Part shown: positions 2,876 through 64,000 of the stretch, one piece after another
How the letters are laid out: each line of letters opens with the position of its first letter
How positions within the stretch are numbered: the stretch's first letter is position 1
Virus record (IMG/VR): IMGVR_UViG_3300043446_004613
Coordinates: 62,001-126,000 of that record
Reading direction: 5' to 3' (one strand)
DNA length: 64,000 bases
The notes under the pieces: model-generated
Told to the model about the DNA's origin: nothing
Seen by the model: only the letters and a program-made list of their open reading frames with translations
The model's database searches: none
Made by a program: the position numbers and the translations under genes

Positions 2876-3306
2876 TGACAATCGCAGAAGGCTTAATACT
2901 AAGGTTGTTTCGACCGCCTAAGTTTCTTGTTGTCGAAGCACATGCAGGCATCAGCACGTTACTTAGTGCGCACTATGACTGCGACTTGGTGCAGGCAGGT
3001 TCGGCAGTTGAAGCAGCTGACTGTCTAGCATCCGGCGTGTATGACCTGATCATTTTGGATGCTGCGACACTTAACGGGAGCACAGCAACCCTGATCAAGA
3101 ACATTCAGACCATGTGTCCAGATACACCCACCGTAGCGTTTAATGCTGTTAATACTGCGTTCGACGAAGACGCGTTGGTTACGGTATTCAATGGGGCGAT
3201 AAAAATTGAACTGCTGGAACATCTGTTCAAGCAGTTCAAGATTAAGCTGCGCACCCGCGAGATCGCGGAGTACTGTGCAAGCATTGACCGGACGGCTGCC
3301 GCTTAG
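2875..3306 (+). CDS. single-domain response-regulator receiver (REC), atypical
   Basis: FLVVE, YDLIILD (phospho-acceptor Asp position), CPDTPTVAF; CheY-like size. Confidence 0.7.
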   Translation: MTIAEGLILRLFRPPKFLVVEAHAGISTLLSAHYDCDLVQAGSAVEAADCLASGVYDLIILDAATLNGSTATLIKNIQTMCPDTPTVAFNAVNTAFDEDALVTVFNGAIKIELLEHLFKQFKIKLRTREIAEYCASIDRTAAA

Positions 3307-3680
3307 CGTGGCGCTTGGGTAACGATCGAGTGGATTTTCTGGAGCAGCATGTCGTGCGACGGCGGCAACTGGACGTTGCGGGCTTCGTCGAGAACATGTT
3401 GCAGCAAGTTGACCGGTACTTCCTTTCCGGCCATCAGGGCTTCAATGATCTGCTTGTCTTGATCACTGTTGGCGAGGTGCGCGAGGATCAGCACCAGCAC
3501 GTCTTTCATCTGGCTCACTTCACGCGGAGAAAATTGGCCGGGAGGCTGCATGCCTTCACGCCCGCCGCCCATCACACGGGAGAGGTCATCACCACGGCGC
3601 GGCATCGGACGACGACCCGGATCACGGGGCGGCATCGACGGCATATCATCATTTTCACGAATAAGGTTTTTTGCGTTCAT
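3303..3680 (-). CDS. hypothetical protein with LIRE leader (MNAKNLIRE...)
   Basis: Start reassigned from 3956 because that extension runs through the tRNA-like gene; TATTTA motif 8 nt upstream of 3680. Confidence 0.65.
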   Translation of the reverse strand: MNAKNLIRENDDMPSMPPRDPGRRPMPRRGDDLSRVMGGGREGMQPPGQFSPREVSQMKDVLVLILAHLANSDQDKQIIEALMAGKEVPVNLLQHVLDEARNVQLPPSHDMLLQKIHSIVTQAPR

Positions 3681-3892
3681 ATCGTCCATAAATACGGTTG
3701 CCAGTCCAGACTGGCGTGGAACCACTGTCCCGGTTCTGGCGAGAGGTTCTCTCCCTCTGTCAACTCTGCTTGTTCTAAGGCGTTGAGTTTTACCAAATGG
3801 TGGCTGACTAATCTCTTCGATTAACAGCGTGCAGCCAAAGCGCTTCAACTGCACGCCTGTCCAGAATTGTACCAAACCATCAGCCGTTAAAA

Positions 3893-4006
3893 TGGTGGCT
3901 AGGGCTGGATTTGAACCAGCGTTCATACGATGCCTATGCTTTAGGGTGCCCCCCACACAGGAGACTCAGAGTGCCCTCCGGGCGTCTACCGCTGCGCCAC
4001 CTAGCC
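3893..4006 (-). ncRNA. tRNA-like RNA (114 nt) with canonical acceptor, D and T arms but a 61-nt non-canonical central region
   Basis: GGCTAGG/CCTAGCC-A-CCA acceptor stem; D arm GCG-CAGCGGTAGA-CGC; T arm GCTGG-TTCAAAT-CCAGC; no standard 5-bp/7-nt anticodon arm. Confidence 0.8.
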
Positions 4007-4014
4007 ATGACCGT

Positions 4015-4043
4015 ACTGTATACACGTTATTGCTTATCGTCAA
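4015..4043 (-). promoter_or_regulatory. sigma70-type promoter for the tRNA-like RNA
   Basis: TTGACG-17 nt-TACAGT ending 8 nt before the RNA 5' end. Confidence 0.75.
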
Positions 4044-4443
4044 CAGCAGCTTTTAACAAAGTTTCGTCAGGGCAGAGCATAACGGCGGCCTGTTGGTAAA
4101 TCTGACCTTCCAGTTCGTTACCGTCGGCAAAAAATTTACCGGCCATCTCCGAGGCTTTGATCCAAGCGTCTTTTCCGTGTTGAATTTCCAGCTGGCGACA
4201 GACCAGTGATGGTCGCCACAAGCGCTCTACCGGGCGTACGCTGCCGCAGTCGAGGAATACCTGAATACCGGTCAGGATAAACAGCGCACTGTTGGCTGCC
4301 TCTGCCGGATCAGCACCTTCACTAGCCATCAACAAGGCCAGCATGTTGGCTAATTTCTCGTTCTCGCCGCCTTCCTTTAGCGGCAGCAACTGAATCGGTT
4401 CAGGTTTTGCTTCGGGCGATGGTGTTGGTTGTGGAGTATCCAT
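4027..4443 (-). CDS. hypothetical protein (138 aa)
   Basis: ORF in operon run. Confidence 0.6.
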   Translation of the reverse strand: MDTPQPTPSPEAKPEPIQLLPLKEGGENEKLANMLALLMASEGADPAEAANSALFILTGIQVFLDCGSVRPVERLWRPSLVCRQLEIQHGKDAWIKASEMAGKFFADGNELEGQIYQQAAVMLCPDETLLKAAVDDKQ

Positions 4444-7002: not shown

Positions 7003-8247
7003 ATGCCATATACCGATCCTAATGTTCTGACGGTACTGCAAAAGTACCGTGTTGCTGATGAGCAGGGCAACCTGCGCATGTCACCTATACGCCGTAATCG
7101 GCCAAACGCGCAGCCCGTACCAGTGCTCTCCGCTGACGTTATCGACAAGCTGGTTGCTTCTGATCCTACGCCCGATAAACGCTGGCTCGACTGGATTTTC
7201 TACCAAGCGGGCGGCGGTGACACTGCTAAAAACATGGCGAAGCAGGCACTTGATTCGATCAAACAGCGTTTCATCGATGAGCGCGTTAACGGCTGGACTC
7301 AACCTGTAACTGGTCAGTATCAAAATCCTGTTCCTCGTGCGGAAGCGGTCGCCCGTTGGGAACGTGCCGAACCTAAGTTTCGCGACGTGCTTTTGGTGAG
7401 TGACGAAGACACGGTAAAGAAGCTAAGAACCTTCGGCTTTTATCGCGAATGGCCCGGCAACGCAAATGTATACGCAAACGTGGTCGATGCCATGAACGCA
7501 TACATGAAAGTTTTCAAGCTTTTGGAAAAGATGAACACCGAGCTTGTGCGCGAAGGCGGCGAGCAGCTGCCGACAACACCGGATGGAATTCCAACATTCA
7601 GTCGCATGAAGGAAATCGCGCAGAAGGTTGAGCGCTACTACGCTTCCAAGAAAGCTCGCTCGGACATCCGCGAACAGACGATCTACGACGACGATGTCAT
7701 CACTGCCTTGGCTCCGTTGACGTATGCAGCTGCCGTCAAGTACGGCTATGATCAGTGGCCGTGGGCAAGCCGCAAGGGCTTTGAAGCTGTATTGGCAGGC
7801 GATCCCGGTAACTGGCGTACTCGCGATGAGTGGAAAGCAAACACCAGTCGCGGTACGGCGATCGTTTACCTGACTTTCCATACGCCGGTACCGGCTTGGA
7901 TTGTCCGTCGCGACGGCGCATGGGATGTGAAAGACCTGACGGACTTAGCTCTGCATCTGGAACCGTCCGACGCCAAAGAAAATCCTGATACTTGGCAGGT
8001 TTATGACCAAGAAAACCAGAACACGCGCACGCTTGCTCAAATCAAGCAGATGATCCTCAGCGAGCCTACCCGCACAGACGCGGAAGAGGATGAAGTGCCG
8101 ATCAAGCGTGGTGCAAATGTATACAAGACAACCGAAGAAGCGCAGCATGTCGTTAACAGCCTTGACCGTGCGGTTAACGCTGTTCAGAAATGGCTGGCTA
8201 AGTTCGACATGAAAGCGGTCAAATCGGACGTGTTCACTCTCGATTGA
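7003..8247 (+). CDS. hypothetical protein, paralog 1 (DPTPDKRWL motif)
   Basis: 414 aa; colinear similarity to the next gene. Confidence 0.8.
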   Translation: MPYTDPNVLTVLQKYRVADEQGNLRMSPIRRNRPNAQPVPVLSADVIDKLVASDPTPDKRWLDWIFYQAGGGDTAKNMAKQALDSIKQRFIDERVNGWTQPVTGQYQNPVPRAEAVARWERAEPKFRDVLLVSDEDTVKKLRTFGFYREWPGNANVYANVVDAMNAYMKVFKLLEKMNTELVREGGEQLPTTPDGIPTFSRMKEIAQKVERYYASKKARSDIREQTIYDDDVITALAPLTYAAAVKYGYDQWPWASRKGFEAVLAGDPGNWRTRDEWKANTSRGTAIVYLTFHTPVPAWIVRRDGAWDVKDLTDLALHLEPSDAKENPDTWQVYDQENQNTRTLAQIKQMILSEPTRTDAEEDEVPIKRGANVYKTTEEAQHVVNSLDRAVNAVQKWLAKFDMKAVKSDVFTLD

Positions 8248-10194: not shown

Positions 10195-11286
10195 TCAATT
10201 TATGCGGCAGTAGACGGCACCGTTATCGCAAACGGTATAATCGTGATCGTAGTGTGCAACAAAATGCGCCCAGCCGTCAGTGCGAACAGCGCTTTCTGCC
10301 GCAGCCTTAATGTCTATTTGCGCAATACGTAGAGCCTCGCGCATGGCATCTCTTCCGTAAACATCGCGCATCCAAGCCCAAGGATCGACAGTCGGTTTTT
10401 CGTTGTCGATGTAATCCTGCTTTTTGCTGTCTAATAGCGCAGCCAACTCAGGAGTCTCCGGTAACGGCTCACCGTCGGCATCATAAAACGGATCGTTCGA
10501 ATCGACGTAATTGTTGTCATACAAAAACGTAAGAAGCTCGTCGTAGTCGAGGCTGTTTACTTCGTCGTCCCAGTCTTCGTAAGGATCGCCAATGGCATTG
10601 CGCAGAGAGTCCTCGTCAATAAAGCCGCTAAGCCATTCTTGATTGAATACATCCGGCTCATGTTCAAGGTCGTTTGTCACCAGTTCCAAGGCGAATTCTT
10701 CAGCTACGTCTTCATCCTTGAACATCTTGTAGGTTTGCCCTGCAACCTCGAACTCAAAGCGTGTTGTTGAGTCTTTATCGTCCGCATCGTAATCACCAAA
10801 ATGGCGGCTTTCGATTTCGATCTCACTGGTATCAATATTTTCATTTGCAGCGAACTCTATGAGGGCAACATCAACCCAGTTGCCTGCCAGCATGCGTATG
10901 ACTTCTTCACGGGCGTCTAGGTTAGGTTCAGCTTCAAAATCAGGCTCAGGAACTGGATCAGGCTCGGGCGGAAGCGGCAGTTCTTCGGCCTCTCCAACCA
11001 ATTTTGCCATCGGTTTGATCTTGGCCTGTGGGTCGTGGAGTACTTTTTGGACTTCGTCCTTGAGGGCATTAACCGAATCATAGTCACAGCCCGGACAAAG
11101 CTTCTTGGCGTGCGCCTCGCGCATGGATGTGAACGTGCCATGAACACCGCCGCACTTAGGACAGCGTACGTACCACTTCACTTCGTGCGGCCAGTTGGAA
11201 TGATCAGCATAGACGCCGAGAGAACCACTCCAGCCCTCAGCGGATTTTCCCTCACAGATCGCTTGGATGGCAGCTTCAGGAGTCAT
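10195..11286 (-). CDS. acidic protein with N-terminal Zn ribbon
   Basis: CPKC...CPGC; very acidic C-terminal domain ending DGWAHFVAHYD. Confidence 0.75.
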   Translation of the reverse strand: MTPEAAIQAICEGKSAEGWSGSLGVYADHSNWPHEVKWYVRCPKCGGVHGTFTSMREAHAKKLCPGCDYDSVNALKDEVQKVLHDPQAKIKPMAKLVGEAEELPLPPEPDPVPEPDFEAEPNLDAREEVIRMLAGNWVDVALIEFAANENIDTSEIEIESRHFGDYDADDKDSTTRFEFEVAGQTYKMFKDEDVAEEFALELVTNDLEHEPDVFNQEWLSGFIDEDSLRNAIGDPYEDWDDEVNSLDYDELLTFLYDNNYVDSNDPFYDADGEPLPETPELAALLDSKKQDYIDNEKPTVDPWAWMRDVYGRDAMREALRIAQIDIKAAAESAVRTDGWAHFVAHYDHDYTVCDNGAVYCRIN

Positions 11287-11852
11287 GTGGCACGTGGAGC
11301 GTGACGGCGCGGATATTCCGGCTGATCGTTCATCTCCAGCGTGCCGTCAGGCAGGATAGTGTCTTTACGTGAAAAAGGTAGAAGCTCGCCGCCACTCTCA
11401 CGCGTACCGGCGTTGGTGCGGCGATTAAACCAGTACCACGTACCTTTCTGTTGAAAGATGCTCCAACCGGTGCCGTCAATGTATTTGGTGATCCGGTCAC
11501 GGGTAGTCGATGTCTGCCATCCGCCGGTATCGACGACGACTCTGCCGTCTGGATACGCAACGACCACGTCCGTATGGTGGAGATGTACGGCTAATCGATG
11601 ATACGGGCCTCCGTTGTCGTGATTGAAGAGGTAGGTGTTGTTATCGATTTTGCGTCGATAGCGCCCGTTGCTTAAAGCGAGCAGCCTGCGGTAAACGTCA
11701 TTACCTGATCCCGGTACTCGATGCTTAACACCTGCTGCTTGTATCTGCGCCAGTTCATCTGCTGCCGCGCCTAGAGCAAGAGGATCGAAGCCGGAATCAA
11801 CCGGCTGTTCCTCTTCAATGAGCAGGCGTACGATGGTATTGGCAGGGAGCAT
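11283..11852 (-). CDS. phage hypothetical protein with LLIEE leader
   Basis: Start reassigned to MLPANTIVRLLIEEE (abuts upstream stop at 11854); TGGWQTSTTRDRI motif. Confidence 0.7.
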   Translation of the reverse strand: MLPANTIVRLLIEEEQPVDSGFDPLALGAAADELAQIQAAGVKHRVPGSGNDVYRRLLALSNGRYRRKIDNNTYLFNHDNGGPYHRLAVHLHHTDVVVAYPDGRVVVDTGGWQTSTTRDRITKYIDGTGWSIFQQKGTWYWFNRRTNAGTRESGGELLPFSRKDTILPDGTLEMNDQPEYPRRHAPRAT

Positions 11853-13153: not shown

Positions 13154-13515
13154 ACGCCTAAATTAAAATCTTGCTGTTTGATCGGGCCTGCGCCCGGTTT
13201 TGTTGACCACTCATCCGCGTTCCGGTCGGTGATGTAAAAACAGTCGTACATCCCGTACTTTACCGGAATCTGAAATTCGCCCGGACGCGTCTTCCACGTT
13301 TTTGTTTTACCGTTGCGGCGGACTTCGGCTTGACCCCGTGTATTCCGCTTGGTGCGGTGGTAAAAGCGCTGTGCAGTCTGCGCAGTGCGATAGTTCACAA
13401 CACCAGAGGCATCCTCTACAGCCGATGCGTCAGCATGCTGATGTACAAAGTCAACCGGATCAAAATCCGGCTCAGCTTCCAGCAGCGAATCAACGACTTG
13501 GCTTGCCTTGCTCAT
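13150..13515 (-). CDS. hypothetical protein with VVDSLLE leader
   Basis: MSKASQVVDSLLEAEP; TKTWKTRPGEFQIPVKYG motif. Confidence 0.7.
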   Translation of the reverse strand: MSKASQVVDSLLEAEPDFDPVDFVHQHADASAVEDASGVVNYRTAQTAQRFYHRTKRNTRGQAEVRRNGKTKTWKTRPGEFQIPVKYGMYDCFYITDRNADEWSTKPGAGPIKQQDFNLGV

Positions 13516-19878: not shown

Positions 19879-20134
19879 ATGGTTTCACCTCAGATTAAAA
19901 AGCTTGTTGAGGATGAGTCTGTAGACGCGCAAGGCTACATCGATAGCACGCCCAATCCGTACGAGGTAGAAGTGCGCGTCTGGATAAAGTTTTCCGAACC
20001 GCTTGCTAACCGCGAAGTGGTTGCTGACCGCGTTAAAAGCTGCCCTAGCCGCTGAAATTGAAAGCGGTAATGGATTATCCGGTGACGAGAATGAAGCATA
20101 CACTGAGTCATTCACCGTCCAGCTTGTCGACTGA
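19879..20134 (+). pseudogene. small protein interrupted by an apparent 1-nt insertion (A4 run at 20035-20038)
   Basis: MVSPQIKKLVEDE...VADRVK continues as AALAAEIESG...VQLVD* if one A is removed; the stop then abuts the convergent gene at 20135. Confidence 0.55.
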
Positions 20135-23297: not shown

Positions 23298-24014
23298 GTG
23301 GATAACGATAATCCAGAAGCGTTTTTGGCGCACTTGCCGCCGACGAAAGAACTGCACGTACAAGAATTGCGACGCAACATGTTCAATTACGTGCAGGATT
23401 TCTTTTACGATAACGAGGAAGAAAGCGACGACGTTCGGATGTACACAGAAGACGGTGCTTACGTGAGGCAGGTTCCAAACAGCTACAACGGACGTGACAT
23501 CTACGTAGCTGTTCGCGACGATCATCCAAATCCCGAGCGCCGTCGGTCTGAAGTTGTGCTTACTGATCTTCAACACCGTACGATTACAACGTATAGACAC
23601 CACATCAGTTTTGCAGAAGCAGCTATGTCGGCGATAGCCCTTGCAGCGAAGCTGGAGAACGGCCAAGCTGAAATTGTAGGCCGAAACCGTTTAATCGTTC
23701 ACGAATCTATGATCACTGAAAGTAAACACAAAGCAGACTGCACCTGTGGTTTCTGTAAAAACAAAGGGAGCTTCGGCAAAAAAGAAAAGGCCGAAGCCAA
23801 GCCTGAGATGACCGCAGAAAGCGTTGTAGACACGCTTCTTGAAAACGATTACGCGCAGCGCATGAAAATCGGCGCGGACGTTGAAAGCGAACACACCAGT
23901 GATCCAAAAAAGAAGCGTAAAATTGCACGCGAGCACATGCGCGAGAATCCAAAGTACTATCCCAAGACGCCTAAGCCGAAGGGCGCTAAAGAAGCGTTGC
24001 GCTGGACAAAATAG
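23298..24014 (+). CDS. modular hypothetical protein with DUF5661-like C-terminal domain
   Basis: GADVESEHTSD...KIAREHMRENPKYY; internal CTCGFC; internal VVDTLLE. Confidence 0.7.
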   Translation: MDNDNPEAFLAHLPPTKELHVQELRRNMFNYVQDFFYDNEEESDDVRMYTEDGAYVRQVPNSYNGRDIYVAVRDDHPNPERRRSEVVLTDLQHRTITTYRHHISFAEAAMSAIALAAKLENGQAEIVGRNRLIVHESMITESKHKADCTCGFCKNKGSFGKKEKAEAKPEMTAESVVDTLLENDYAQRMKIGADVESEHTSDPKKKRKIAREHMRENPKYYPKTPKPKGAKEALRWTK

Positions 24015-24097: not shown

Positions 24098-24495
24098 TTA
24101 GACGGCTCTGATCGGGTGTTCCACAGGCCAGCGCTTTTCTAGTTCAATCAGGCGCTCTTTTAGACTGTACGGGCTGATTAACTCCTCAACACCTGTACCG
24201 TTTGTAGCGTGCTGATAGTAGTAGCGCAGCGAAGCAAGGTAGCAATGTCCGGGCGTACGTGCATATTTTGCACCTAAGCATACGGAAATCAACAAAGGGC
24301 AGCGTCCGTTTTGACCTCCTCTGTAGATCGTTTTTCCCAATCATCGTTTACATCATCGTACGCGTATCCCAGCGTTTTCAAGAGCATGCCGACATCAGGC
24401 AACTCATCAACATAGCGTGCCGGGTCATCGTCCATGCTGGAATCTTACAGCAGGCGAGCTACCGCACAGGCTGCACATGTCGCGGCGATACTCAT
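24098..24495 (-). pseudogene. interrupted LLE-leader family gene (in-frame TAA plus frame break)
   Basis: MSIAATCAACAVARLL-TAA-DSSMDDDPARYVDELPD; stop at 24445-24447; second break near 24290-24340. Confidence 0.5.
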
Positions 24496-24977
24496 TGAGG
24501 CGTCGGCGGTAGAGGTTTGTCAAACCAGACACGTGAACCATCGTTCAGTTCAACACCTAGCATGTGATCGCGGTATTTTCCGTGCAGGTCAGTAAAGCTG
24601 TAGCGCACTTCTTTTTCTTTTAGCGGGCCGCCGCAGTATTGACATTTTTCGCCAGTTTGTGGCTTTAACGCGTTGCATTGTGAATCGGCACAGACATGTA
24701 CCGTGTGTGTTTGCTTGTAATTGTCAGTACTGCCGATCTGCGCCCCGTAAATTCGGTGACTGACATCAGGCTTATCCACACCGATCCGCGCCAGCGCTCG
24801 TTCGTATCCGATGGATCGGCCCAGTTCAAGAAATAGCTCGTGCGCCTGCCGTTTCTTTTGCAGTAACTCATCGTAGGTTTGACCCGCTTTATCCCAGTGC
24901 TGTACGCGATTATACGCCTTCACGTGCTGGTTGAGGTCATTCTCCAGCAATCTGTCTACTATGTGTTTTGCAGTCAT
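24492..24977 (-). CDS. Zn-ribbon protein with IVDRLLE leader
   Basis: MTAKHIVDRLLEND; CADSQC...CQYC. Confidence 0.7.
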   Translation of the reverse strand: MTAKHIVDRLLENDLNQHVKAYNRVQHWDKAGQTYDELLQKKRQAHELFLELGRSIGYERALARIGVDKPDVSHRIYGAQIGSTDNYKQTHTVHVCADSQCNALKPQTGEKCQYCGGPLKEKEVRYSFTDLHGKYRDHMLGVELNDGSRVWFDKPLPPTPQ

Positions 24978-25145: not shown

Positions 25146-25552
25146 AGCGGCTCAATGGTTACCACGCCTTCCAGAGTGAAAATGTTCACGTGGATATGGT
25201 CGGCAGTAGCTAAAGTCGTATTACTGTATACAGGTTTAATTCCGTCGGCAACGGAGATTGTTATGTGTGGGTAGTCGTTTTCGCTTTCGACGCCGACAAG
25301 GGCCGCCTGCGCTTTACCGTCATCAGCGTAAGCTACGACAGGTATGTGTACGATTTCACCTTCAAGGTCACGGTATTTGGACAGAGTCGCTTCATCCGGG
25401 TCATAGGCCATCGTGACGTGATGCGCTATTACACGTTCCAGCGTCGGCGGGATGCGTCGCAAAAGCTCGGCACGGCTGGCCGGTGTCAGCACGGCACCGA
25501 CAAAGAGTCCGGTGCTTTCGAGCATCTGCTTTACAACATTCTGCGCGTTCAT
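25142..25552 (-). CDS. 2H phosphoesterase-family protein
   Basis: Two HxT motifs (AHHVTM, PHITIS). Confidence 0.72.
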   Translation of the reverse strand: MNAQNVVKQMLESTGLFVGAVLTPASRAELLRRIPPTLERVIAHHVTMAYDPDEATLSKYRDLEGEIVHIPVVAYADDGKAQAALVGVESENDYPHITISVADGIKPVYSNTTLATADHIHVNIFTLEGVVTIEPL

Positions 25553-25556
25553 GTCG

Positions 25557-30475: not shown

Positions 30476-31762
30476 TGCGGCTAAGCTCTCTTCCTGACGG
30501 CCTTCTTCCTCGGCGCGGATTTCGTTAACGATGTTCTGGATGTACTGACGTCCGCGAGGTGTCTCCTGTAGGATGTCCTGCATCAACTGGTTGAATTCAC
30601 CTGTTGGGCGCGTGACCAGATGGCGGTAAATCTTGCCCATCAAATCGGCACCTCCAGCGTTATTTACGAGATGGTTCAGATGACGCCAGACGCCCGGCCC
30701 TTTCATGATGTCCCACTGTTCATTCGCAAGCGTGTCGCCCTTGGAATAGGCATACTTGCGCACTTCTTCCGGGTCATCCTCGTTGAAGGACAGGAACTCG
30801 TACAAGCCTTTGGCCAGTTCTTGGATCAGCACTGGGAATACCAGAGCAGAAGCACGAATTGTGTACGTGCCATCATCTTCCGGTGTCACTTCTTCCATGC
30901 CGCCACCGCCCGCGCCAGAACCCATCATCTGGTTGAGGGTATCTTCCGGCATCATCCAGTACATCAACTCAGCGATAGACATGAGCTTACCGTAGGTTTG
31001 TAGGATGTTCGGGTCGATTGCCCGTAGCTGGTCGGCGATCTGGTGGTAGGCGTAATTCTTGTTGATGGCCGCGCCTTGGATGAGCATGTTGATGAAGCGG
31101 CGTTTATTAGCTTCTTCGTCGTATTCGCCGCGAATCTGAGGCACGTCTAAACCGAGTTCGGCGCGTTCCTCTTCTGTCTCCTCACCCGGTTCAACCTGCA
31201 TCTGCTGGCCCTGCTCTTCCTCATCTTCGGCTTCCTCAGCTGCACCTTGGATACGCTGCTGCATTTTGCGCATCATCGCTTGCGGATCAAGCAACCGAGC
31301 TTCAATTTTCAGATCACCGGATTCAACAGCTTCGCGGGCATCGCGGAATTCAGGCAAGCTGAGCACCACTTCAACCGCTGCCTGTTCCAGTTCTTGGCGG
31401 TGCGCGGCCTCGGCGCGGGTAGCCTGCTGCATCGCCTGCATCATGAGCATACCCAGCTGCTGCGGCTGCATGCGGCGTGGGTCTTGCCCAGTGTACTGCT
31501 GCACCTTGCGCACGATCTCAGGATACACGTTGGACGTCACCAATTCGCTGTAAGACTGGGTCGGATCAGGCCGATTTGGGTCATCGCGGTATGGCGCACC
31601 TTGGCGGCGTGCTGGCTTGTTCTGCGGAAAGGCAGGATTACCAGCATACGGATGCTGGCCGGTCTGGATTTTGCGCTTTTTCTGTGGATCGATCCAGTCA
31701 GGCACGTCGCCCAGATCGAGTGCCATTTCCGTCAGGATGCGCTTGGATAGTGGAGTACTCAT
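30452..31762 (-). CDS. conserved large-phage protein, putative head/core component
   Basis: KRRFINMLIQG and FPVLIQELAKG motifs; MSTPLSKRILTE leader; start set at ATGA-type overlap. Confidence 0.7.
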   Translation of the reverse strand: MSTPLSKRILTEMALDLGDVPDWIDPQKKRKIQTGQHPYAGNPAFPQNKPARRQGAPYRDDPNRPDPTQSYSELVTSNVYPEIVRKVQQYTGQDPRRMQPQQLGMLMMQAMQQATRAEAAHRQELEQAAVEVVLSLPEFRDAREAVESGDLKIEARLLDPQAMMRKMQQRIQGAAEEAEDEEEQGQQMQVEPGEETEEERAELGLDVPQIRGEYDEEANKRRFINMLIQGAAINKNYAYHQIADQLRAIDPNILQTYGKLMSIAELMYWMMPEDTLNQMMGSGAGGGGMEEVTPEDDGTYTIRASALVFPVLIQELAKGLYEFLSFNEDDPEEVRKYAYSKGDTLANEQWDIMKGPGVWRHLNHLVNNAGGADLMGKIYRHLVTRPTGEFNQLMQDILQETPRGRQYIQNIVNEIRAEEEGRQEESLAASLIRQRK

Positions 31763-31983
31763 GCGCCTTTGATGAGTTGCTTGGCCTTGCTCTCCCAACA
31801 AGCTTTTGGCTTAGGCATCGGCCCCGGTTCAGTGCCGTGACGGCGACGACGGAACGGATTGGGATGTTTGCTAGGAGCCGGGCGACCCGGTTTGGTGTCG
31901 GGCTTGACGTCAGGTTTGACATCAGGCTTGGTCGGAGCTTCAGTCGGGCCAGCGGCCCGTTCAAATAGTTGACGCGCTTTCAT
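31759..31983 (-). CDS. small Pro/Lys-rich protein (KPDV repeats)
   Basis: MKARQLFE leader; PTKPDVKPDVKPDTKP. Confidence 0.65.
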   Translation of the reverse strand: MKARQLFERAAGPTEAPTKPDVKPDVKPDTKPGRPAPSKHPNPFRRRRHGTEPGPMPKPKACWESKAKQLIKGA

Positions 31984-41599: not shown

Positions 41600-41660
41600 T
41601 TTACCTTTCTGCCGCATACGCGGACTTTTGTTTACAGCTGGCGTGTTTGCCGGTTGTATA

Positions 41661-41684: not shown

Positions 41685-42224
41685 ATGACCGCACCGAAAG
41701 GAACAAATCTTAAAGCTGTTGCGATCGCCGCCAAACTGCTTGAAAACGAAGACCTGTCGTTTACGAACCAGTACCGTGGAGGCGATGGCACAGGTGGTCT
41801 TATTCTCTGGGGTGGCTCGCCATCTGACCCTGATGGTGATCCAGAAGGTACCATTCTTATCGAGTGGGGCGTTGAGATCGAAGCACGTAGCTGGGGCATA
41901 AAGGACATCGTGCCGTTCATCAAGCGCATCGTGCTGGATGGATACTGGAACATCTATCAGGAAACAGGCCCGGATGTTGAGAGCGAAGAGCGCTTTCATT
42001 ACGAATACCCGGAGACACCGGAAGCAAAGCCTACGGTTAAAGCAACAGCAGGCTCTGTAGACGTCGATACAGCTAATCCCGAGGATGTTGAACGCTTGGC
42101 ACAGCCACCAAAATGGAAGCTGGAATATGGTATCGACCGCTATCGCGACAACGATAACCGTACCACGTTCATTCCAAAAGCGGATGTTAATCTGACCACC
42201 CGAACGATTGAAATCACGTTCTAA
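41685..42224 (+). CDS. acidic hypothetical protein with AAKLLE leader
   Basis: AVAIAAKLLENED. Confidence 0.7.
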   Translation: MTAPKGTNLKAVAIAAKLLENEDLSFTNQYRGGDGTGGLILWGGSPSDPDGDPEGTILIEWGVEIEARSWGIKDIVPFIKRIVLDGYWNIYQETGPDVESEERFHYEYPETPEAKPTVKATAGSVDVDTANPEDVERLAQPPKWKLEYGIDRYRDNDNRTTFIPKADVNLTTRTIEITF

Positions 42225-46918: not shown

Positions 46919-47518
46919 ATGAGCAAGATAATCTGTGTCGGCAACTCTAAAACGGTATCGTCGTCAATACTGACGGCGGCTAACATACTAGGTTACAGCA
47001 CCATCGGCTGGAACGAGCACTACGTTAAAGCGTGGAATTCCGGCGATGAATCCTCTTGCCTATTAACGGCGCAGGCGTATGACTTTTTATACAGTTGGCC
47101 GTGGCGCTGCCTTTACCAGCAGCTGGATGCAGCCCATCCCGGCAGCAAGTTCATCCTGTCTACAATGAATAGCGACACATGGGCCGATCAGTTTGTGCGT
47201 CATATCGCCTACAATCGACCCCTGTCGTGGATTACGGAAGCTCGCATCAAAGCGTACGGTTTTGATCCAGAGATGTACTTGGATGACAAGCCTTACCTTA
47301 TCCAAAACATCTACGAGGCCAAAAACGCAGAGGTTCAAGCGTACTTCGCAAGTCGCCCGGACGATTTGCTTACCGTTGACTTCAACACTGATCCTACGTG
47401 GGATGCCCTTTGCACCTTTTTGGGTAAGCCGATACCGGATGTACCATTTCCGGTCATTCCAGCAGCAAGTAGCCCCGTCATTCTTGGGTACGGAGCGACA
47501 GGCACTAATGTTCCGTGA
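46919..47518 (+). CDS. sulfotransferase-family protein 2 (tandem paralog)
   Basis: IICVGNSKTVSSS, WPW, KFILST, WDALCTFL. Confidence 0.78.
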   Translation: MSKIICVGNSKTVSSSILTAANILGYSTIGWNEHYVKAWNSGDESSCLLTAQAYDFLYSWPWRCLYQQLDAAHPGSKFILSTMNSDTWADQFVRHIAYNRPLSWITEARIKAYGFDPEMYLDDKPYLIQNIYEAKNAEVQAYFASRPDDLLTVDFNTDPTWDALCTFLGKPIPDVPFPVIPAASSPVILGYGATGTNVP

Positions 47519-48867
47519 ACCGCATTGTAGACAAGCTGCTTGAAATGGACATTCCAGACGATCCTCTGGAGTTAATCCATCAAACGCACAATCCGTCCGA
47601 TGAAGCGCAAAGCATCTTGCGCGATGAGCTTGTCGACATGGGCTGGCGGCATATCCGACTCACTCTCTCTGATGAAGGCTGGTTGCTTCACGCCGGTATG
47701 ATTGATCCGCAGCACCGCGCAGAGTGGGAAAATAGCGGTGCTCGTGTAGCACCGGCTCCCCAAGAAACGCCGCTGCTACGCCCGCGCATAATGCGGACGT
47801 TCAAGGCTGCGGCTCGTCGCGCTGGCATGGACGTAAGTAGCGCGAAGCTGACGTCAATAAGACCTGCGTATGACTCGCACGATCTGTACTACGCATGGGA
47901 AGACTTTGAAGATGATCCCGGTGATTGGGAGATCGAAATTGAACTCCAGTGGTCACCAAAAGACAAGTTTTGGAGCAAAGCCAGCGCAGCACTCGGCTAC
48001 GAGACTAAACCCTACCAGCAGGCAGGAAAGCTCGCAAAAACCGGTTCAGCAAAACCATCTCCACTTACCCCTGAACAGCTAGATGCTGCGGATGACGCTA
48101 CGCGCTCACGGCTCTTAAAAGCTGAACGTGCCGCTCAAGGTTCGGAAGAACGTGCGGATAAAGCCTTGCAGCGTTGGCGTCAGGCCGGAGCCGACCGGGC
48201 TGAACTGTCGAAATACCTTGAGCAGACAGACGAAAGCATAAAAGGCATGGTCGCTGCCGGATTACTCGGTGCCTCCACTTTAGCCGGAACGGCAGCAAAG
48301 CACACTCAGCGCCCGGCACGCATGCCGCATAGCCAGATTGTTCAAACCGCAAAGCGTATGGATACACAGTCACCAGAATCGATCATCATGGGTTATGAAA
48401 ACAGCAAAGATAACCCAAAAGGCGGCTACGATAAGCGAACTGGACGTTGGTATCCACATCGCAGCATTGAAGGCGGTTCAGACACGATTGCCTACGGGCA
48501 CAAGATTCAAGCCGGTGAAGACTATAGCAACGGTTTGTCTGACGCAGAGGCTACGGCACTTTTGCGGCAAGACATCGCAAAGCGGGAACGCGACATCCAG
48601 CGCAATATTCCGGCGTACGCCAGCTTGCCGCAGTACGTTAAAAATGCGGTGATTAGCGCGTGGTACCGTGGTGATCTCGGCCCACGGGCGACTCCGCGCA
48701 CACTCCGTTTGATAAACGCAGGCCAGTGGGAGCAGGCAGCCCGCGAATATCTCAATCATAATGATTTCCGTAATGGCCCGAATGGCGTCAAAAACCGTAT
48801 GCAGAATAACGCAAACGCTTTTGCCCGCTATGCTCAAGAAAAAGGCACAACATACGCAAGTCACTGA
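47515..48867 (+). CDS. multidomain protein with C-terminal GH24 (phage lysozyme-like) domain
   Basis: YEN...GGY...WYPH.S.EGG.DTIAYGHK...LL.QD; IVDKLLE leader. Confidence 0.8.
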   Translation: MNRIVDKLLEMDIPDDPLELIHQTHNPSDEAQSILRDELVDMGWRHIRLTLSDEGWLLHAGMIDPQHRAEWENSGARVAPAPQETPLLRPRIMRTFKAAARRAGMDVSSAKLTSIRPAYDSHDLYYAWEDFEDDPGDWEIEIELQWSPKDKFWSKASAALGYETKPYQQAGKLAKTGSAKPSPLTPEQLDAADDATRSRLLKAERAAQGSEERADKALQRWRQAGADRAELSKYLEQTDESIKGMVAAGLLGASTLAGTAAKHTQRPARMPHSQIVQTAKRMDTQSPESIIMGYENSKDNPKGGYDKRTGRWYPHRSIEGGSDTIAYGHKIQAGEDYSNGLSDAEATALLRQDIAKRERDIQRNIPAYASLPQYVKNAVISAWYRGDLGPRATPRTLRLINAGQWEQAAREYLNHNDFRNGPNGVKNRMQNNANAFARYAQEKGTTYASH

Positions 48868-61626: not shown

Positions 61627-61652
61627 AGTCTGTTCTGTAGAACAGAAAACTT

Positions 61653-61925
61653 ATGGACGCCAAACTGGATAGTGAACTTAAAATGACCCGGATACGCGGC
61701 GCGGCTTTGACTTTGCGCGTTCAGCCGGTAATGGTCATGTCTGAGATGCTGAGTGAGTACATTCAGCTTTGCGATGCTCAGCAACGTCAGATCGCTGACT
61801 TATGCGCCATAATTGCCAAATATGAAGCTAATCAAACAAATGATCCAGCAGTACCAAGCCAAGCACAACCGCCTGCCGCTGCAAGTCCTTGTACACCCGG
61901 TAGCACTGACAGCCCTCGCACTTAA
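61653..61925 (+). CDS. small coiled-coil hypothetical protein
   Basis: ORF; 3' third overlaps the next gene. Confidence 0.5.
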   Translation: MDAKLDSELKMTRIRGAALTLRVQPVMVMSEMLSEYIQLCDAQQRQIADLCAIIAKYEANQTNDPAVPSQAQPPAAASPCTPGSTDSPRT

Positions 61926-62055
61926 AAAGTCTGCCCTGCCGATGTGTGATGGCGTACCAATCGTGTGTCGTGAGGTTACAGTGGCACCTGCTGTAGACAG
62001 TCTTCGCCTTGGTATAACCGTAATCGACGGAGCCATCCGTACTTTTGACATCTAA
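61822..62055 (+). CDS. hypothetical protein
   Basis: MKLIKQMIQQYQAKHNRLP... Confidence 0.55.
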   Translation: MKLIKQMIQQYQAKHNRLPLQVLVHPVALTALALKKSALPMCDGVPIVCREVTVAPAVDSLRLGITVIDGAIRTFDI

Positions 62056-62980
62056 TTTTATGCGTAGCCTAATTGCAATCAAAACCTATCGCCGACTCCA
62101 CGCCCTCAAAGCTATGATGTCGGGCATCGAACAACACTGTCCGCAGTATCACTGCATTATCAGCGAAGACTGCGGTCAGCGTGATGGAACGACAGATTTC
62201 ATTACTAAAGGCCGTGTCGGCACAGCTGTGCCGGAACTGCTGTCGACAAAGCATGTCGTTGAAAGCGGCGACGCTAACTTCATTAACGCAGATGTATACA
62301 CTGGAGACGTAAATCTGGGTGTTACAGGCAACAACAACCGTTTGCTCAAGCTGTTCATGGATGGCGAGTGGGATCACCTGCTGCTGTGCGATGACGATTT
62401 GCTCGTGACGGGTGATTTCGTTGAAGCATACGCGAACGCCCATGCAGACCTTGGTGTGGACATGTTTTGCTTCTGCGACTTCACTGAAGCATCTCCAGCC
62501 ATATCCGGTGCCCCGGAAACGTATAAATGGACTACTTATCCGATGCGCGGTTATCAAGTAAAGTTTCTACCCCGCTTCACCGGCATCATGATGTCGGTAA
62601 CACGCAGCCTCATTGAAAAGATAGGCTACATGGATGCCGAGTTCGGCAAGTTTGGAGAAGAACACTGCGACTGGACAATTCGTGCGCGTATGGCAGGCGG
62701 CATACGTCTGAACAACACGGATATGAATTGTTTGGACATCGCCCATAACCGCCTGACCCATCAAAACGTACAGACCAGTATGTCAGGTTCAGCGCGTAAG
62801 CACGCTGATCAAGAAGCCCACGTCGCTATGCAGCGGGCTGCCTATGAATACCGTTTGCGTCACTATTACCGGCCCTTCCGTCTTACCTATCCAGTGATGG
62901 CGGCAGGCCATTCCGGTGTCGGCGTGCCCTGCCGCCAGCTGGATCAGATCGGCTATAGACTCGTGAACGCCCCTGCGTAG
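62045..62980 (+). CDS. GT2-family glycosyltransferase
   Basis: IISED, LGVTGNNN, LLCDDD, IGYMD..FG.FG.EH.DW..R. Confidence 0.8.
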   Translation: MTSNFMRSLIAIKTYRRLHALKAMMSGIEQHCPQYHCIISEDCGQRDGTTDFITKGRVGTAVPELLSTKHVVESGDANFINADVYTGDVNLGVTGNNNRLLKLFMDGEWDHLLLCDDDLLVTGDFVEAYANAHADLGVDMFCFCDFTEASPAISGAPETYKWTTYPMRGYQVKFLPRFTGIMMSVTRSLIEKIGYMDAEFGKFGEEHCDWTIRARMAGGIRLNNTDMNCLDIAHNRLTHQNVQTSMSGSARKHADQEAHVAMQRAAYEYRLRHYYRPFRLTYPVMAAGHSGVGVPCRQLDQIGYRLVNAPA

Positions 62981-62987
62981 TTAGGCT

Positions 62988-63635
62988 GTGACTAAGAATC
63001 CGCATCTGAAGAAATTACTCGGCGAATCGGAACACGACGAGGTTCACCGCTACGCCGATGCTATGCAGCAAACGCCGCAGAACGGACGCGAAGCATACCC
63101 AGATCAGCCTGAGCTTGCCTCTGCGTTTGATCGGCTGCATTTGCAGGATAAGTCGTTGGACGAACTGCGCGACATGGTTGCCAATCAAGCGCTAAACGGC
63201 TTTGAGCTTGAGGTCGTAAACAACGAGATCGAGTTTTTGAGCGGACTCTCTGAAAATCTCGAAGATCAGCAGAATATGCCCGCACGTCCAAAAGACGAGA
63301 CGCAGGACGACACGCCGATCAAGCCGAAAAGTAACAAGGCGGCCAGCTTCGGAAACGTCAACGTGGAACTGGCTCCGAGCGTGCGGGAATTGATCGGTCT
63401 TTGGAAGCGCGGCGAGCACATGGCAGTTGCCGCCCGCTTGATGTTCACGCCAGCGAGCTATGTCGATTTCATTGCGTTATCTTTTACCATTGGTCAAGCT
63501 GGTGCAATGGAATTGGCTGGTTTACTGGATGAACTTTCAGATACCGAAAATATGCGACCGCCGTCCACCCCGCCAGAGTACAAAGAATTGCTTCAAAAAG
63601 TCGCAGGAGCAAACGCAGAGGAAAACGTTATATGA
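62988..63635 (+). CDS. acidic hypothetical protein with KKLLGE leader
   Basis: GTG start 4 nt after TAGTTA; MTKNPHLKKLLGESE. Confidence 0.7.
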   Translation: MTKNPHLKKLLGESEHDEVHRYADAMQQTPQNGREAYPDQPELASAFDRLHLQDKSLDELRDMVANQALNGFELEVVNNEIEFLSGLSENLEDQQNMPARPKDETQDDTPIKPKSNKAASFGNVNVELAPSVRELIGLWKRGEHMAVAARLMFTPASYVDFIALSFTIGQAGAMELAGLLDELSDTENMRPPSTPPEYKELLQKVAGANAEENVI

Positions 63636-64000
63636 GCAGCAACCCCCTTTTAGCCCGCGCCCTTGGTGAATCAACCGGCGATGTCGTGCCGGTTCTCGCC
63701 AATGTACCGCGCAGCACGCAACGCAGTCGTCTTGAGCGCCTGCGCCAGCGCCGTGATCCAGAAGGTATTGAATCCAAAAATGAAAGCCATCGGCGCGACA
63801 TCTCGCGCCTGATCGGTGAATCTGAAACCGATGAGCAGCAAAAGCGCAGCGATAGCGTTATCCCGGACGAAGCAGAGGAGATTGATAAGAGCGCCTACAC
63901 TGTAGGCAAGCCGATTGATCCGCCCAAGAAAGTCGTGCAGGAACCGTCGCATCCAACAGCTGATAAGGAGAAGTACATTACTCCGGCATCTGCTTTGACT
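63632..64000 (+). CDS. hypothetical protein, partial (RALGE leader)
   Basis: Manual translation MSSNPLLARALGEST...ISRLIGESE... open to the window end; ATGA overlap. Confidence 0.65.
   Translation, partial: MSSNPLLARALGESTGDVVPVLANVPRSTQRSRLERLRQRRDPEGIESKNESHRRDISRLIGESETDEQQKRSDSVIPDEAEEIDKSAYTVGKPIDPPKKVVQEPSHPTADKEKYITPASALT

What the first reader, a model, noticed from the sequence alone, without database searches (positions are those of the whole stretch)
3303..63700. Recurrent N-terminal '...IVxxLLE' leader: candidate capsid-targeting and prohead-protease cleavage signal
Seen in unrelated proteins within about 8-25 residues of the N-terminus: MNAKNLIRE (3680), MTPEAAIQAICE (11286), MLPANTIVRLLIE (11852), MSKASQVVDSLLE (13515), MVSPQIKKLVE (19879), MTAKHIVDRLLE (24977), MNAQNVVKQMLE (25552), MSTPLSKRILTE (31762), MKARQLFE (31983), AIAAKLLE (41685), MNRIVDKLLE (47515), NPHLKKLLGE (62988), NPLLARALGE (63632). 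Most of these genes also carry the GTANTTA motif. Knowledge: T4 internal proteins carry a 10-residue capsid-targeting leader ending in Glu that gp21 removes, and phiKZ-type proteases also cut after Glu. Inference: this is a distinct amphipathic-helix leader marking head cargo.
Basis: partly seen in the sequence, partly recalled or inferred. Interest (0 to 1): 0.78.

Follow-up and report, generated by a model that had tools for sequence, protein, structure and literature searches.

The report
T4-style capsid-targeting leader peptide
About a dozen unrelated proteins of this uncultivated freshwater jumbo phage start with the same short helix ending in Leu-Leu-Glu, which matches the cutting preference of the T4-type head protease encoded just past the window, so it probably tags proteins for loading into the capsid, although no virion data exist to prove it.

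Summary
Six of them (genes starting at 11852, 13515, 24977, 25552, 41685, 47515) plus an internal copy at 23808 share a real motif, M-x(2-9)-[IVL]-[VA]-x-x-[LM]-[LI]-E followed by acidic residues. Exact IV..LLE occurs 4 times against 0.04 expected. At least eight more copies lie in flanking DNA of the same 211-kb contig.

The carriers are not paralogs. Their domains include a GH24 lysozyme, a 2H phosphoesterase, DUF5661 and a Kyano_Gp96-like domain. In three protein families, close homologs keep the leader with a nearly invariant LLE, while distant homologs lack it and begin at the domain.

A Peptidase_S77 (T4 gp21) homolog and a gp23-type capsid protein lie 1.5 kb past the window end. T4 gp21 cuts after L/I-x-E. 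The capsid protein has an invariant ...AAIMLE|N near the position of T4's maturation cut.

All leader genes sit in units headed by GTANTTA, the motif that also heads structural genes. Replication genes use a different motif.

Seven of the 13 examples do not stand out from background under the core-motif model; some have partial support from homologs. This is a new variant of the T4 capsid-targeting-sequence system.

The parts
24942..24977 (-). Leader MTAKHIVDRLLE of the 161-aa gene 24492-24977. The cargo has a zinc ribbon and unknown function.
   Evidence: PSSM p~0.001. Most homologs keep M-x-x-A-x-x-[IL]V-x-x-[ML]L-E, with MLGE and MLDE variants. AF2 predicts a helix at residues 3-10 with pLDDT 63, then a break at L-E-N-D. 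GTAATTA lies 4 nt upstream.
25517..25552 (-). Leader MNAQNVVKQMLE of the 136-aa gene 25142-25552. The cargo is a 2H phosphoesterase.
   Evidence: The 21 homologs at 52-65% identity all keep L-L-E (one N-terminally truncated). Seven distant homologs lack the leader. AF2 predicts a helix at residues 3-12 with pLDDT about 62, against >93 for the body. The fold matches CNPase, LigT and a phage phosphodiesterase. GTAGTTA lies 4 nt upstream.
13477..13515 (-). Leader MSKASQVVDSLLE of the 121-aa gene 13150-13515.
   Evidence: PSSM p~0.001. Residues 5-26 are 41% identical to residues 2-23 of the lysozyme protein, with no other similarity. The gene lies in the unit headed by GTAGTTA at 14410.
11814..11852 (-). 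Leader MLPANTIVRLLIE of the 189-aa gene 11283-11852. The cargo has a Kyano_Gp96-like / phrog_554 domain.
   Evidence: 35 of 149 cluster representatives carry the leader, with the acidic residue at median position 13, L at -2 in 34 of 35, and E in 31 of 35. Among sequences where the domain motif was matched (36 leaderless, 9 leader-bearing), it starts at about residue 19 in leaderless homologs and about 73 in leader-bearing ones.
47515..47544 (+). Leader (GTG)NRIVDKLLE of the 450-aa gene 47515-48867. The cargo has a C-terminal GH24 lysozyme domain.
   Evidence: Pfam Phage_lysozyme, E=6e-11, residues 321-428. PSSM p~0.001. A distant homolog in L006 starts MSIIKLKDLLHE.
41685..41744 (+). Longer leader MTAPKGTNLKAVAIAAKLLE of the 179-aa gene 41685-42224.
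   Evidence: PSSM p~0.001. GTAGTTA lies 9 nt upstream, within a palindromic bidirectional copy.
23808..23843 (+). Internal leader copy MTAESVVDTLLE at residues 171-182 of gene 23298-24014, directly in front of its DUF5661 domain.
   Evidence: Standalone DUF5661 homologs carry the leader at their true N-terminus (MSRAAEIVAALLD..., MNNAAALVAVLLD...).
62988..63026 (+). L-G-E variant (GTG)TKNPHLKKLLGE of the 215-aa gene 62988-63635, the first gene of the unit that leads to the protease and capsid genes.
   Evidence: [LI]GES occurs 4 times against 0.73 expected. GTAGTTA lies 4 nt upstream. Its position matches that of T4 genes 67/68 upstream of gene 21.
63632..63670 (+). L-G-E variant MSSNPLLARALGE of a 255-aa gene that runs past the window end. 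A second copy, ISRLIGES, lies at 63800-63823.
   Evidence: Orthologs keep the N-terminal xxR[VL]LGE[SD] (L020 MRNTMMSRLLGEDD; L048 VRRVLGES and LLRVLGED).
31960..31983 (-). Possible short leader MKARQLFE of a 74-aa basic, Pro/Lys-rich protein (31759-31983).
   Evidence: It fits L-x-E only. P0070, a homolog of the 11852 family, starts MVRARQLFEDD in place of the usual leader. GTATTTA lies 8 nt upstream. It is not significant under the core model.
3654..3680 (-). Possible short leader MNAKNLIRE, followed by acidic and Pro-rich residues. The gene start is uncertain.
   Evidence: GTATTTA lies 8 nt upstream of ATG 3680. Database gene calls instead start this ORF further upstream, giving 190 or 207 aa. 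Not significant under the core model.
11251..11286 (-). Weak candidate MTPEAAIQAICE (gene 10195-11286, 363 aa, very acidic).
   Evidence: It meets only I-x-E and is not among the top PSSM scores. It lies in the GTATTTA-headed unit that also contains 11852.
19879..19911 (+). Weak candidate MVSPQIKKLVE (58-aa ORF directly after the baseplate wedge gene).
   Evidence: PSSM p=0.07. It lies in the baseplate operon.
31727..31762 (-). Weak candidate MSTPLSKRILTE (gene 30452-31762, 436 aa).
   Evidence: PSSM p=0.17. It lies in the unit headed by GTATTTA at 31998.

Best explanation
The motif is a portable leader of 10-20 residues with the form M-x(2-9)-[IVL]-[VA]-x-x-[LM]-[LI]-E. It forms a short amphipathic helix and is usually followed by an acidic, often proline-rich linker. 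It works like the capsid-targeting sequence (CTS) of phage T4.

Proposed mechanism:
1. Leader-bearing genes are expressed together with the structural genes.
2. The helix docks the protein onto the scaffolding core of the assembling prohead. Here that core is a gp21-like protease fused to a long scaffold-like tail.
3. Once the gp23-type shell closes, the S77 serine protease cuts after the Glu of L-L-E (or of L-G-E or L-D-E in variants). The same chemistry trims the major capsid protein at ...AAIMLE|N.
4. The freed cargo stays in the head with the DNA and is delivered to the host at infection. Cargo includes a GH24 lysozyme-domain protein, a 2H phosphoesterase, DUF5661 and several proteins of unknown function.

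Shown here: the motif, its enrichment, its modularity and conservation, the protease and capsid genes, and the shared upstream motif. Inferred by analogy with T4: docking, cleavage, packaging and ejection.
For: Enrichment.

The signal acts at the protein level. Ile, Leu and Glu codons vary freely among leaders.

The carriers are not paralogs. Only the first 13-22 residues are alike, and their domains are unrelated.

Modularity and purifying selection are seen in three families:
- 2H enzyme: the 21 close homologs all keep L-L-E, and 7 distant homologs start at the domain.
- 161-aa protein: the leader is kept, with MLE, MLGE and MLDE variants that all preserve L-x-E or a hydrophobic residue-L-E.
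- Kyano_Gp96-like family: 35 of 149 representatives have the leader, with L at -2 in 34 of 35 and E in 31 of 35. The 4 Asp cases have a Glu within 2 residues.

Protease: a Pfam Peptidase_S77 gene lies at window-equivalent 65484-67178. It aligns to T4 gp21 (5JBL, E=2e-8), with the His of E-H-P and the Ser of V-S-S-R-G aligned to T4's N-H-P and V-S-S-R-G. The N-terminal Q-Y-L-I-E|G matches T4's Q-L-L-I-E|T.

Specificity: T4 gp21 cuts after L/I-x-E. The T4 CTS is 10 residues long, and Asp at its last position blocks processing but not targeting (PMC9026906). T-even internal proteins share only the CTS (PMC3012670).

Capsid protein: L72-E73-N74 is invariant in 9 homologs down to 28% identity. A profile match to T4 gp23 places it within about 5 residues of T4's E65|A66. 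The distant T4-like phage L006 has SILLE|N at the same place.

Location: five leader genes lie directly downstream of the capsid gene and one lies directly upstream of the protease gene. More lie further along the contig, and relatives have their own different leader genes at these sites.

Regulation: all 13 listed genes lie in GTANTTA-headed units, against 33 of 75 genes overall (hypergeometric P=4.5e-6; 6 of 6 for the core set, P=0.0055). The baseplate wedge, the Ad2 adaptor and the protease-capsid unit share that motif. PolA, primase-like, DnaB, helicase, RusA and the UvsX unit use GTTCTWW instead.

Structure: AF2 places a low-confidence helix at residues 3-12 and 3-10, followed by a short break, in front of confident bodies. 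Hydrophobic moments are 0.28-0.81 (most 0.45 or above), against a random median of 0.27. The T4 CTS scores 0.44.
Against: - No proteomic or N-terminal sequence data exist for this phage or its clade, so cleavage and packaging are unobserved.
- The Glu is not universal. Orthologs of the 171-aa gene read ...CLLDAEGEY in 5 of 8 cases, and standalone DUF5661 proteins end the helix in L-L-D.
- Copies of the motif occur at C-termini, where cleavage would remove almost nothing (...SVVSHLLEER*...QVVKQLLG*), and inside fusion proteins.
- GTANTTA also precedes a radical SAM gene and a HAD-like gene, and its role as a late promoter is itself inferred.
- The cargo proteins found so far are mostly acidic or neutral, unlike T4's basic internal proteins.
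Confidence: 0.68

Rival explanations
1. The helix is a docking or cargo-loading peptide for the capsid interior, comparable to encapsulin cargo-loading peptides. It works at any position in a protein, and proteolytic removal is not a necessary part of its function.
For: Motif copies lie at C-termini (L007 15808-16197, L010 15904-16281) and at internal positions. Some orthologs have Asp instead of Glu. In T4, Asp at the last CTS position still allows targeting without processing (PMC9026906).
Against: Glu is kept in 31 of 35, and in all 21 close homologs, in two independent families, and the Asp cases have a Glu within 2 residues. The MLE, MLGE and MLDE variants all preserve an L-x-E-type site. 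The motif matches the invariant LE|N of the capsid protein.
Confidence: 0.15
2. The helix binds a common partner unrelated to the capsid, for example a phage assembly chaperone, a membrane, or a replication or transcription hub. Its resemblance to a gp21 site is then coincidental.
For: Most cargo has no known virion role. The window's leader genes are scattered among replication genes. One cargo is an enzyme (2H phosphoesterase) of a kind that usually acts in the cytoplasm.
Against: No replication enzyme carries the motif at its N-terminus. Leader genes share the upstream motif of structural genes rather than that of replication genes. Six flank the protease and capsid genes. The helix is too short and too charged to span a membrane.
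Confidence: 0.1
3. The pattern is chance, amino-acid composition, or an mRNA-level constraint on the first codons of short-leader transcripts.
For: A-rich second and third codons (M-N/T/S-A-K) are common at starts in this genome. The loose L/I-x-E rule is only weakly enriched. The Val at position -5 is GTA in 8 of 12 leaders although GTA is the rarest Val codon.
Against: Exact IV..LLE occurs 4 times against 0.037 expected, with P about 1e-7. Other codons vary synonymously. The motif is conserved at the amino-acid level across hundreds of diverged homologs and also occurs at internal and C-terminal sites.
Confidence: 0.03

Closest known systems
Capsid targeting sequence (CTS) of phage T4 internal proteins IPI, IPII, IPIII and Alt, removed by prohead protease gp21 (MEROPS S77)
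   Same: Both are short N-terminal peptides of 10-20 residues shared by otherwise unrelated proteins. Both end in hydrophobic-x-Glu. Both phages have a gp21-family protease and a gp23-family shell. Both show a conserved leader on variable cargo. T4 IPII and IPIII read MKTYQEFIAE|A in NC_000866. The concept is described in PMC9026906, PMC5694885 and PMC3012670.
   Different: There is no sequence similarity to MKTYQEFIAE. The consensus is different and tighter ([IV]-V-x-x-L-L-E). An acidic, proline-rich linker usually follows. There are many more carriers: at least 15 N-terminal copies in about 40% of the genome. Cargo includes enzymes rather than small basic proteins. Copies also occur internally and at C-termini. 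The protease is fused to a roughly 350-residue scaffold-like tail.
N-terminal propeptides of T4 prohead shell and core proteins (gp24 MAKINELLRE|S, gp22 MLKEQLIAE|A, gp67 MEGLIE|A, gp68, gp21 MNEPQLLIE|T)
   Same: They have the same architecture, M + a few residues + hydrophobic pair + x + E, read from NC_000866. The genes at 62988 and 63632 sit upstream of the protease gene as T4 genes 67 and 68 do.
   Different: The two upstream genes use an L-G-E-S variant and show no detectable homology to gp67 or gp68. Nothing was found here resembling a gp24-type vertex protein.
Propeptides of phiKZ / SPN3US-type giant phage head proteins, cut by S80 proteases at S/A/G-x-E
   Same: Cleavage follows Glu. 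Many head and ejection proteins are processed. The proteases are distant relatives of gp21 (PMC9026906, PMC5694885).
   Different: Those propeptides are mostly longer than 100 residues, and the P3 residue is small rather than Leu or Ile. The protease here is S77-like, not S80.
Encapsulin cargo-loading peptides
   Same: Both are short portable peptides that load unrelated enzymes into an HK97-fold shell. This rests on general knowledge and was not tested here.
   Different: Encapsulin peptides are usually C-terminal, are not removed by a protease, and bind the shell rather than a scaffold.

Membership tests
T4-type capsid targeting sequence / gp21-processed propeptide | Short peptide (about 10-20 residues) at the extreme N-terminus | tested here: met
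   The Glu lies at residue 10-22 in the N-terminal copies, with median position 13 in 35 homologs. Exceptions: 2 internal and 2 C-terminal copies.
T4-type capsid targeting sequence / gp21-processed propeptide | Ends in the gp21 cleavage motif L/I-x-E | tested here: met
   L-L-E, L-I-E, M-L-E or L-G-E is present in every strong copy. L at -2 occurs in 34 of 35 and E in 31 of 35. The motif definition comes from PMC9026906.
T4-type capsid targeting sequence / gp21-processed propeptide | The same genome encodes a gp21-family (S77) prohead protease with its catalytic residues | tested here: met
   Pfam Peptidase_S77. phmmer to 5JBL gives E=2e-8. His and Ser align with T4 gp21 from NC_000866. That these are the catalytic residues rests on prior knowledge of gp21.
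T4-type capsid targeting sequence / gp21-processed propeptide | Shared by proteins that are otherwise unrelated (conserved leader, variable cargo) | tested here: met
   All-against-all blastp finds only N-terminal similarity. The domains are unrelated. Relatives carry different leader genes at the same sites.
T4-type capsid targeting sequence / gp21-processed propeptide | Sequence homology to the T4 CTS MKTYQEFIAE | tested here: not met
   The T4 IPII and IPIII leaders read from NC_000866 share only the general pattern with this motif, not its sequence.
T4-type capsid targeting sequence / gp21-processed propeptide | Late expression together with head genes | tested here: inconclusive
   All leader genes lie in units headed by GTANTTA, as do the baseplate wedge, the Ad2 adaptor and the protease-capsid unit. 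Replication genes use GTTCTWW. No RNA data were available; only DNA runs hold this sequence.
T4-type capsid targeting sequence / gp21-processed propeptide | The protein is found inside the capsid and the leader is removed in mature virions | not testable with these tools
   The phage is an uncultivated metagenomic contig (IMGVR_UViG_3300043446_004613). No proteome is available.
T4-type capsid targeting sequence / gp21-processed propeptide | The leader is sufficient to package a foreign protein | not testable with these tools
   This requires a leader-reporter fusion in a cultured relative.

The most novel reading that the evidence does not exclude
A single tag of about 12 residues (hydrophobic-V-x-x-L-L-E plus an acidic/Pro linker) defines the whole packaged and injected proteome of a widespread, uncultivated clade of T4-headed jumbo phages. 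There would be dozens of cargo proteins per genome, including enzymes such as a lysozyme and a 2H phosphoesterase that could act on the host at the moment of injection. The tag would work at N-terminal, internal or C-terminal positions, and would also serve as the recombination handle by which cargo cassettes are swapped between phages.
Probability: 0.3. Interest if true: 0.75.

Novelty: new variant of a known kind. Interest (0 to 1): 0.6.

Why it matters
If the tag marks head cargo, the injected protein set of an uncultivated jumbo-phage clade can be read from sequence alone. That set is hard to obtain without a cultured host. In T4 such cargo includes anti-restriction proteins.

The tag points to candidate first-strike proteins: a lysozyme-domain protein, a 2H phosphoesterase, DUF5661, and many proteins of unknown function. 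These can be tested for counter-defence roles.

The finding also extends the T4 CTS principle far outside the T-even phages, with a much sharper consensus. It suggests a second natural tag for loading foreign proteins into large capsids.

Tried and rejected
- Megablast of 8 kb against 50,697 phage records found nothing. tblastn with the PolA found only hits below 27% identity, so no cultured relative with a virion proteome is available.
- phmmer of the capsid protein against PDB sequences found nothing. A 9-sequence profile was needed.
- Pfam, PHROGs and NCBIfam gave no function for most cargo.
- The ESM Atlas search and Foldseek were uninformative for the 161-aa protein.
- A strict PSSM scan of the relatives' capsid-gene flanks gave only 8 hits against 3 in reversed sequences. 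That threshold was too harsh to be useful.
- A regex scan showed that most relatives have only 0-3 leader genes next to the capsid gene. The rich cluster seen here is therefore specific to this genome.
- A search for RNA sequencing runs found only DNA runs from a freshwater metagenome, so transcript timing and start sites could not be checked.
- One exact-protein look-up failed.
- I did not walk the remaining roughly 120 kb of the contig, so the genome-wide count of leaders, the portal and any vertex protein remain unseen.
- The paralogy explanation was rejected. A DNA-level motif was also rejected, apart from the unexplained GTA codon bias.

Full report
**What the window is.** The window is part of a 211,113-bp viral contig, IMGVR_UViG_3300043446_004613, at about positions 62001-126000. 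The source is a freshwater metagenome. No cultured phage is close: megablast found nothing, and the family A DNA polymerase is under 27% identical to any phage record. The window is gene-dense with many strand switches. It holds replication genes: PolA at 32003-35380, NAD ligase at 28114-30108, DnaB at 36489-37928, a helicase at 14914-16560 and a UvsX-like recombinase at 55558-56931. It also holds a baseplate wedge gene (17538-19877) and a head-tail adaptor gene (44776-45546).

**Checking the observation.** All 13 peptides are at the stated places. I separated a strict motif from the loose pattern.
- The strict form [ILVMA][ILVMFA]xx[ILVM][ILVM]E ends within the first 25 residues in 6 of 75 window proteins, against 0.63 expected.
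- I then joined the window to flanking DNA of the same or a near-identical genome, giving 87 kb. There, exact IV..LLE occurs 4 times against 0.037 expected, always within the first 50 codons of the ORF. [IV][IV]..LLE occurs 8 times against 0.15 expected.
- Two of the four IV..LLE hits in that count lie outside the window (IVKRLLE, IVESLLE); a third out-of-window copy, IVNRLLE, was seen.
- A leave-one-out PSSM puts 10 of 107 N-termini above the 99th percentile of an internal-window null. 11852 (p=0.018) and 25552 (p=0.025) fall just below.
- The other seven examples (3680, 11286, 19879, 31762, 31983, 62988, 63632) do not stand out with this model.
- The loose L/I-x-E rule that unites all 13 is only mildly enriched at N-termini (25 against 15 expected).

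**What the motif is not.**
- It is not paralogy. All-against-all blastp finds only the first 13-22 residues in common. The downstream domains are unrelated: GH24 lysozyme (47515-48867), a 2H phosphoesterase (25142-25552), DUF5661 (behind the internal copy in 23298-24014), a Kyano_Gp96-like/phrog_554 domain (11283-11852), and several with no match.
- It is not a DNA-level signal. Ile, Leu and Glu codons differ freely among leaders.
- One oddity remains. The Val at position -5 is GTA in 8 of 12 leaders, although GTA is the rarest Val codon. I leave this unexplained.

**Conservation and modularity.** Three independent families give the same picture.
- 2H enzyme: the 21 homologs at 52-65% identity all keep L-L-E (M-x-A-x-x-[IVL]-[VI]-x-x-L-L-E-[DE]; one is truncated before the leader), with the x positions varying. 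Seven more distant homologs lack the leader and begin at the first strand of the domain. The two H-x-T catalytic motifs are invariant.
- 161-aa protein: homologs keep the leader. Three homologs carry an extra domain of about 70 residues in front of the leader.
- Kyano_Gp96-like family: 35 of 149 cluster representatives (each under 50% identical to the others) have the leader.
  - The acidic residue sits at median position 13. L occupies -2 in 34 of 35, L/I occupies -1 in 31 of 35, and I/L occupies -6 in 33 of 35. E is present in 31 of 35.
  - The four Asp cases have a Glu within two residues.
  - An acidic, proline-rich linker follows.
  - Among sequences where the domain motif was matched (36 leaderless, 9 leader-bearing), it starts near residue 19 in leaderless homologs and near residue 73 in leader-bearing ones.
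- One homolog in that family starts MVRARQLFEDD. This gives some support to the window's MKARQLFE at 31983 as a short variant.
- Standalone DUF5661 proteins carry the leader at their true N-terminus. The internal copy at 23808 therefore looks like a gene fusion or an internal start.

**Structure.** AF2 models built from these alignments show the leader as a short helix: residues 3-12 in the 2H enzyme and residues 3-10 in the 161-aa protein. Its confidence is low (pLDDT about 62-63), and a 3-4 residue break separates it from a confidently folded body (pLDDT above 86-93). The 2H model matches CNPase, LigT and a phage phosphodiesterase. Hydrophobic moments of the leaders are 0.28-0.81 (most 0.45 or above), against a random median of 0.27. 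The T4 CTS scores 0.44 and the T4 gp24 propeptide scores 0.59.

**The decisive context lies just outside the window.** A look-up of the last complete gene returned 9.6 kb more of the genome.
- About 1.5 kb past the window end lies a 564-aa protein with Pfam Peptidase_S77, the family of T4 prohead protease gp21. Next to it lies a 487-aa Pfam Gp23 major capsid protein.
- The protease aligns to T4 gp21 (5JBL, E=2e-8). Against the T4 record NC_000866, the His of T4 N-H-P aligns with E-H-P, the Ser of V-S-S-R-G is identical, and the N-terminus MRQYLIE|G matches T4 MNEPQLLIE|T.
- According to PMC9026906, gp21 cuts after Glu in L/I-x-E. The same paper reports that the CTS of the internal proteins is 10 residues long, and that Asp at its last position blocks processing but not targeting.
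- PMC5694885 and PMC3012670 state that T4 internal proteins reach the scaffold core through this CTS, and that T-even internal proteins share nothing else.

**The capsid protein carries the same site.** In nine homologs down to 28% identity, L72, E73 and N74 are invariant (...PLAAIMLE|N). A profile of these sequences matches T4 gp23 at E=1e-22, with profile position 97 aligned to gp23 residue 95. This puts E73 within about five residues of T4's E65|A66 cut. A second invariant Glu (FGRLDE84|V) is a less well placed alternative. L006 is a 40% GC T4-like phage with the gene order portal - small leader-like genes - protease - scaffold - capsid gene. Its capsid protein has SILLE|N at the same place, and its lysozyme homolog starts MSIIKLKDLLHE.

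**Where the leader genes lie.**
- Around the protease and capsid genes there are further leader genes: MKADVIAFKLLE (171 aa, directly upstream of the protease), then MLSAAFIVNRLLE, MLSAAFIVKRLLE, MSESGPRKASRIVESLLE and MPQSKAHSVVSHLLE directly downstream of the capsid gene.
- Further along the contig there are MILAHAIVDVLLE and MKKPNALVQLLE. To the left of the window there is MNANILVDLLLE.
- Relatives have different leader genes at these positions. L042, for example, has three in tandem: MTDAQRIVNHLLE, MTNAQRIVNALLE and MTDAQRIIRALLE. Four of the five genes next to this genome's capsid gene have no ortholog in the relatives' flanks. This is the 'conserved leader, variable cargo' pattern known from T-even internal-protein loci.
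- The two genes at 62988 and 63632 head the unit that runs into the protease gene, as genes 67 and 68 do in T4. They carry an L-G-E-S variant: [LI]GES occurs 4 times against 0.73 expected. Orthologs conserve it as xxR[VL]LGE[SD].

**Regulation.** GTANTTA lies 0-9 nt upstream of start codons. A second motif, GTTCTWW, occupies the same position at other genes.
- Overall, 33 of 75 genes lie in such units. The 13-of-13 result has P=4.5e-6, and 6 of 6 for the core set has P=0.0055.
- Units headed by GTTCTWW include PolA, the primase-like gene, DnaB, the helicase, RusA and the UvsX/SSB-like unit.
- This fits early/middle and late classes, with the leader genes in the late class. It remains an inference without RNA data.
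Only 6 of 13 have it directly upstream.

**What does not fit neatly.**
- Orthologs of the 171-aa gene read ...CLLDAEGEY in 5 of 8 cases, and DUF5661 homologs end in L-L-D.
- Two proteins carry the motif at the C-terminus...SLAESVVSHLLEER* and ...RATQVVKQLLG*. In the second, the stop codon lies inside the next gene's GTAGTTA.
- A 275-aa protein has the motif mid-chain (NVESLANTLLEDEVDAEN).
- These cases suggest that the helix may be the targeting element in its own right, with cleavage an optional second step. Alternatively, some copies may be remnants of recombination between leader cassettes.

**Verdict.** The core observation is real. Its best explanation is a T4-style capsid-targeting and maturation-cleavage leader in a distant, uncultivated jumbo phage with a T4-type head. 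The leader has its own consensus, a linker, many carriers, and enzymes among its cargo. Membership in the T4 CTS class is met for position, length, cleavage motif, cognate protease and variable cargo. It is not met for sequence homology, and it could not be tested for actual packaging and processing. I rate it a new variant of a known kind, with confidence about 0.68 in the mechanism and interest 0.6.

Noticed in passing
window 38235-38652 (+) and 37969-38045 (+): The phage encodes a full-length tmRNA (Rfam RF00023, 127.5 bits; ARAGORN tag peptide AEEAELNSLLAEAESIFNNADEVLANAEAVAA) next to a tRNA-Met.
   Followed up: partly
window-wide, e.g. 25550-25570 and 41655-41675: Two motif classes sit 0-9 nt upstream of start codons, and there is no clear Shine-Dalgarno sequence. 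GTANTTA precedes structural and leader genes, sometimes as a palindromic bidirectional TAACTACGTAGTTA. GTTCTWW precedes replication genes. These look like class-specific promoters that give near-leaderless mRNAs.
   Followed up: partly
leader codons, e.g. window 24957-24959, 47527-47529, 23826-23828: The Val at position -5 of the leader is GTA in 8 of 12 leaders, although GTA is the rarest Val codon (20%). The other leader codons vary. This is unexplained.
   Followed up: partly
L007 15808-16197 (-) and L010 15904-16281 (+): Leader-like helices occur at C-termini (...SLAESVVSHLLEER* and ...RATQVVKQLLG*). The stop codon of the second lies inside the next gene's GTAGTTA motif.
   Followed up: no
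L002 8495-10714; L003 8084-10594: Relatives have 739-836 aa stop-to-stop ORFs that string HAD-like nucleotidase modules and the GH24 lysozyme together. The modules are joined by ...ELEEDWRS(L/M)AAAGL(I/L)G... segments, which makes them look like polyproteins.
   Followed up: no
window 1312-2385 (-): This 357-aa protein has a precomputed Pfam hit to AcrVA2-like (PF26125), a candidate anti-CRISPR family.
   Followed up: no
window 7003-8247 / 8249-9487 and 46337-46915 / 46919-47518: Two pairs of tandem paralogs (39% and 55% identity) of unknown function. The first gene of the first pair and the second gene of the second pair have a GTANTTA motif directly upstream.
   Followed up: no
window-equivalent 65484-67178 (L010 12497-14191): The S77 protease domain (about 200 aa) is fused to a charged, helical tail of about 350 aa. 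It appears to be a protease-scaffold fusion, whereas T4 has separate genes 21 and 22.
   Followed up: partly
L006 10540-11373 (-): In the distant T4-like phage L006, a DNA/RNA non-specific endonuclease (Pfam Endonuclease_NS, E=4e-47) with a hydrophobic N-terminus lies directly downstream of the capsid gene.
   Followed up: no
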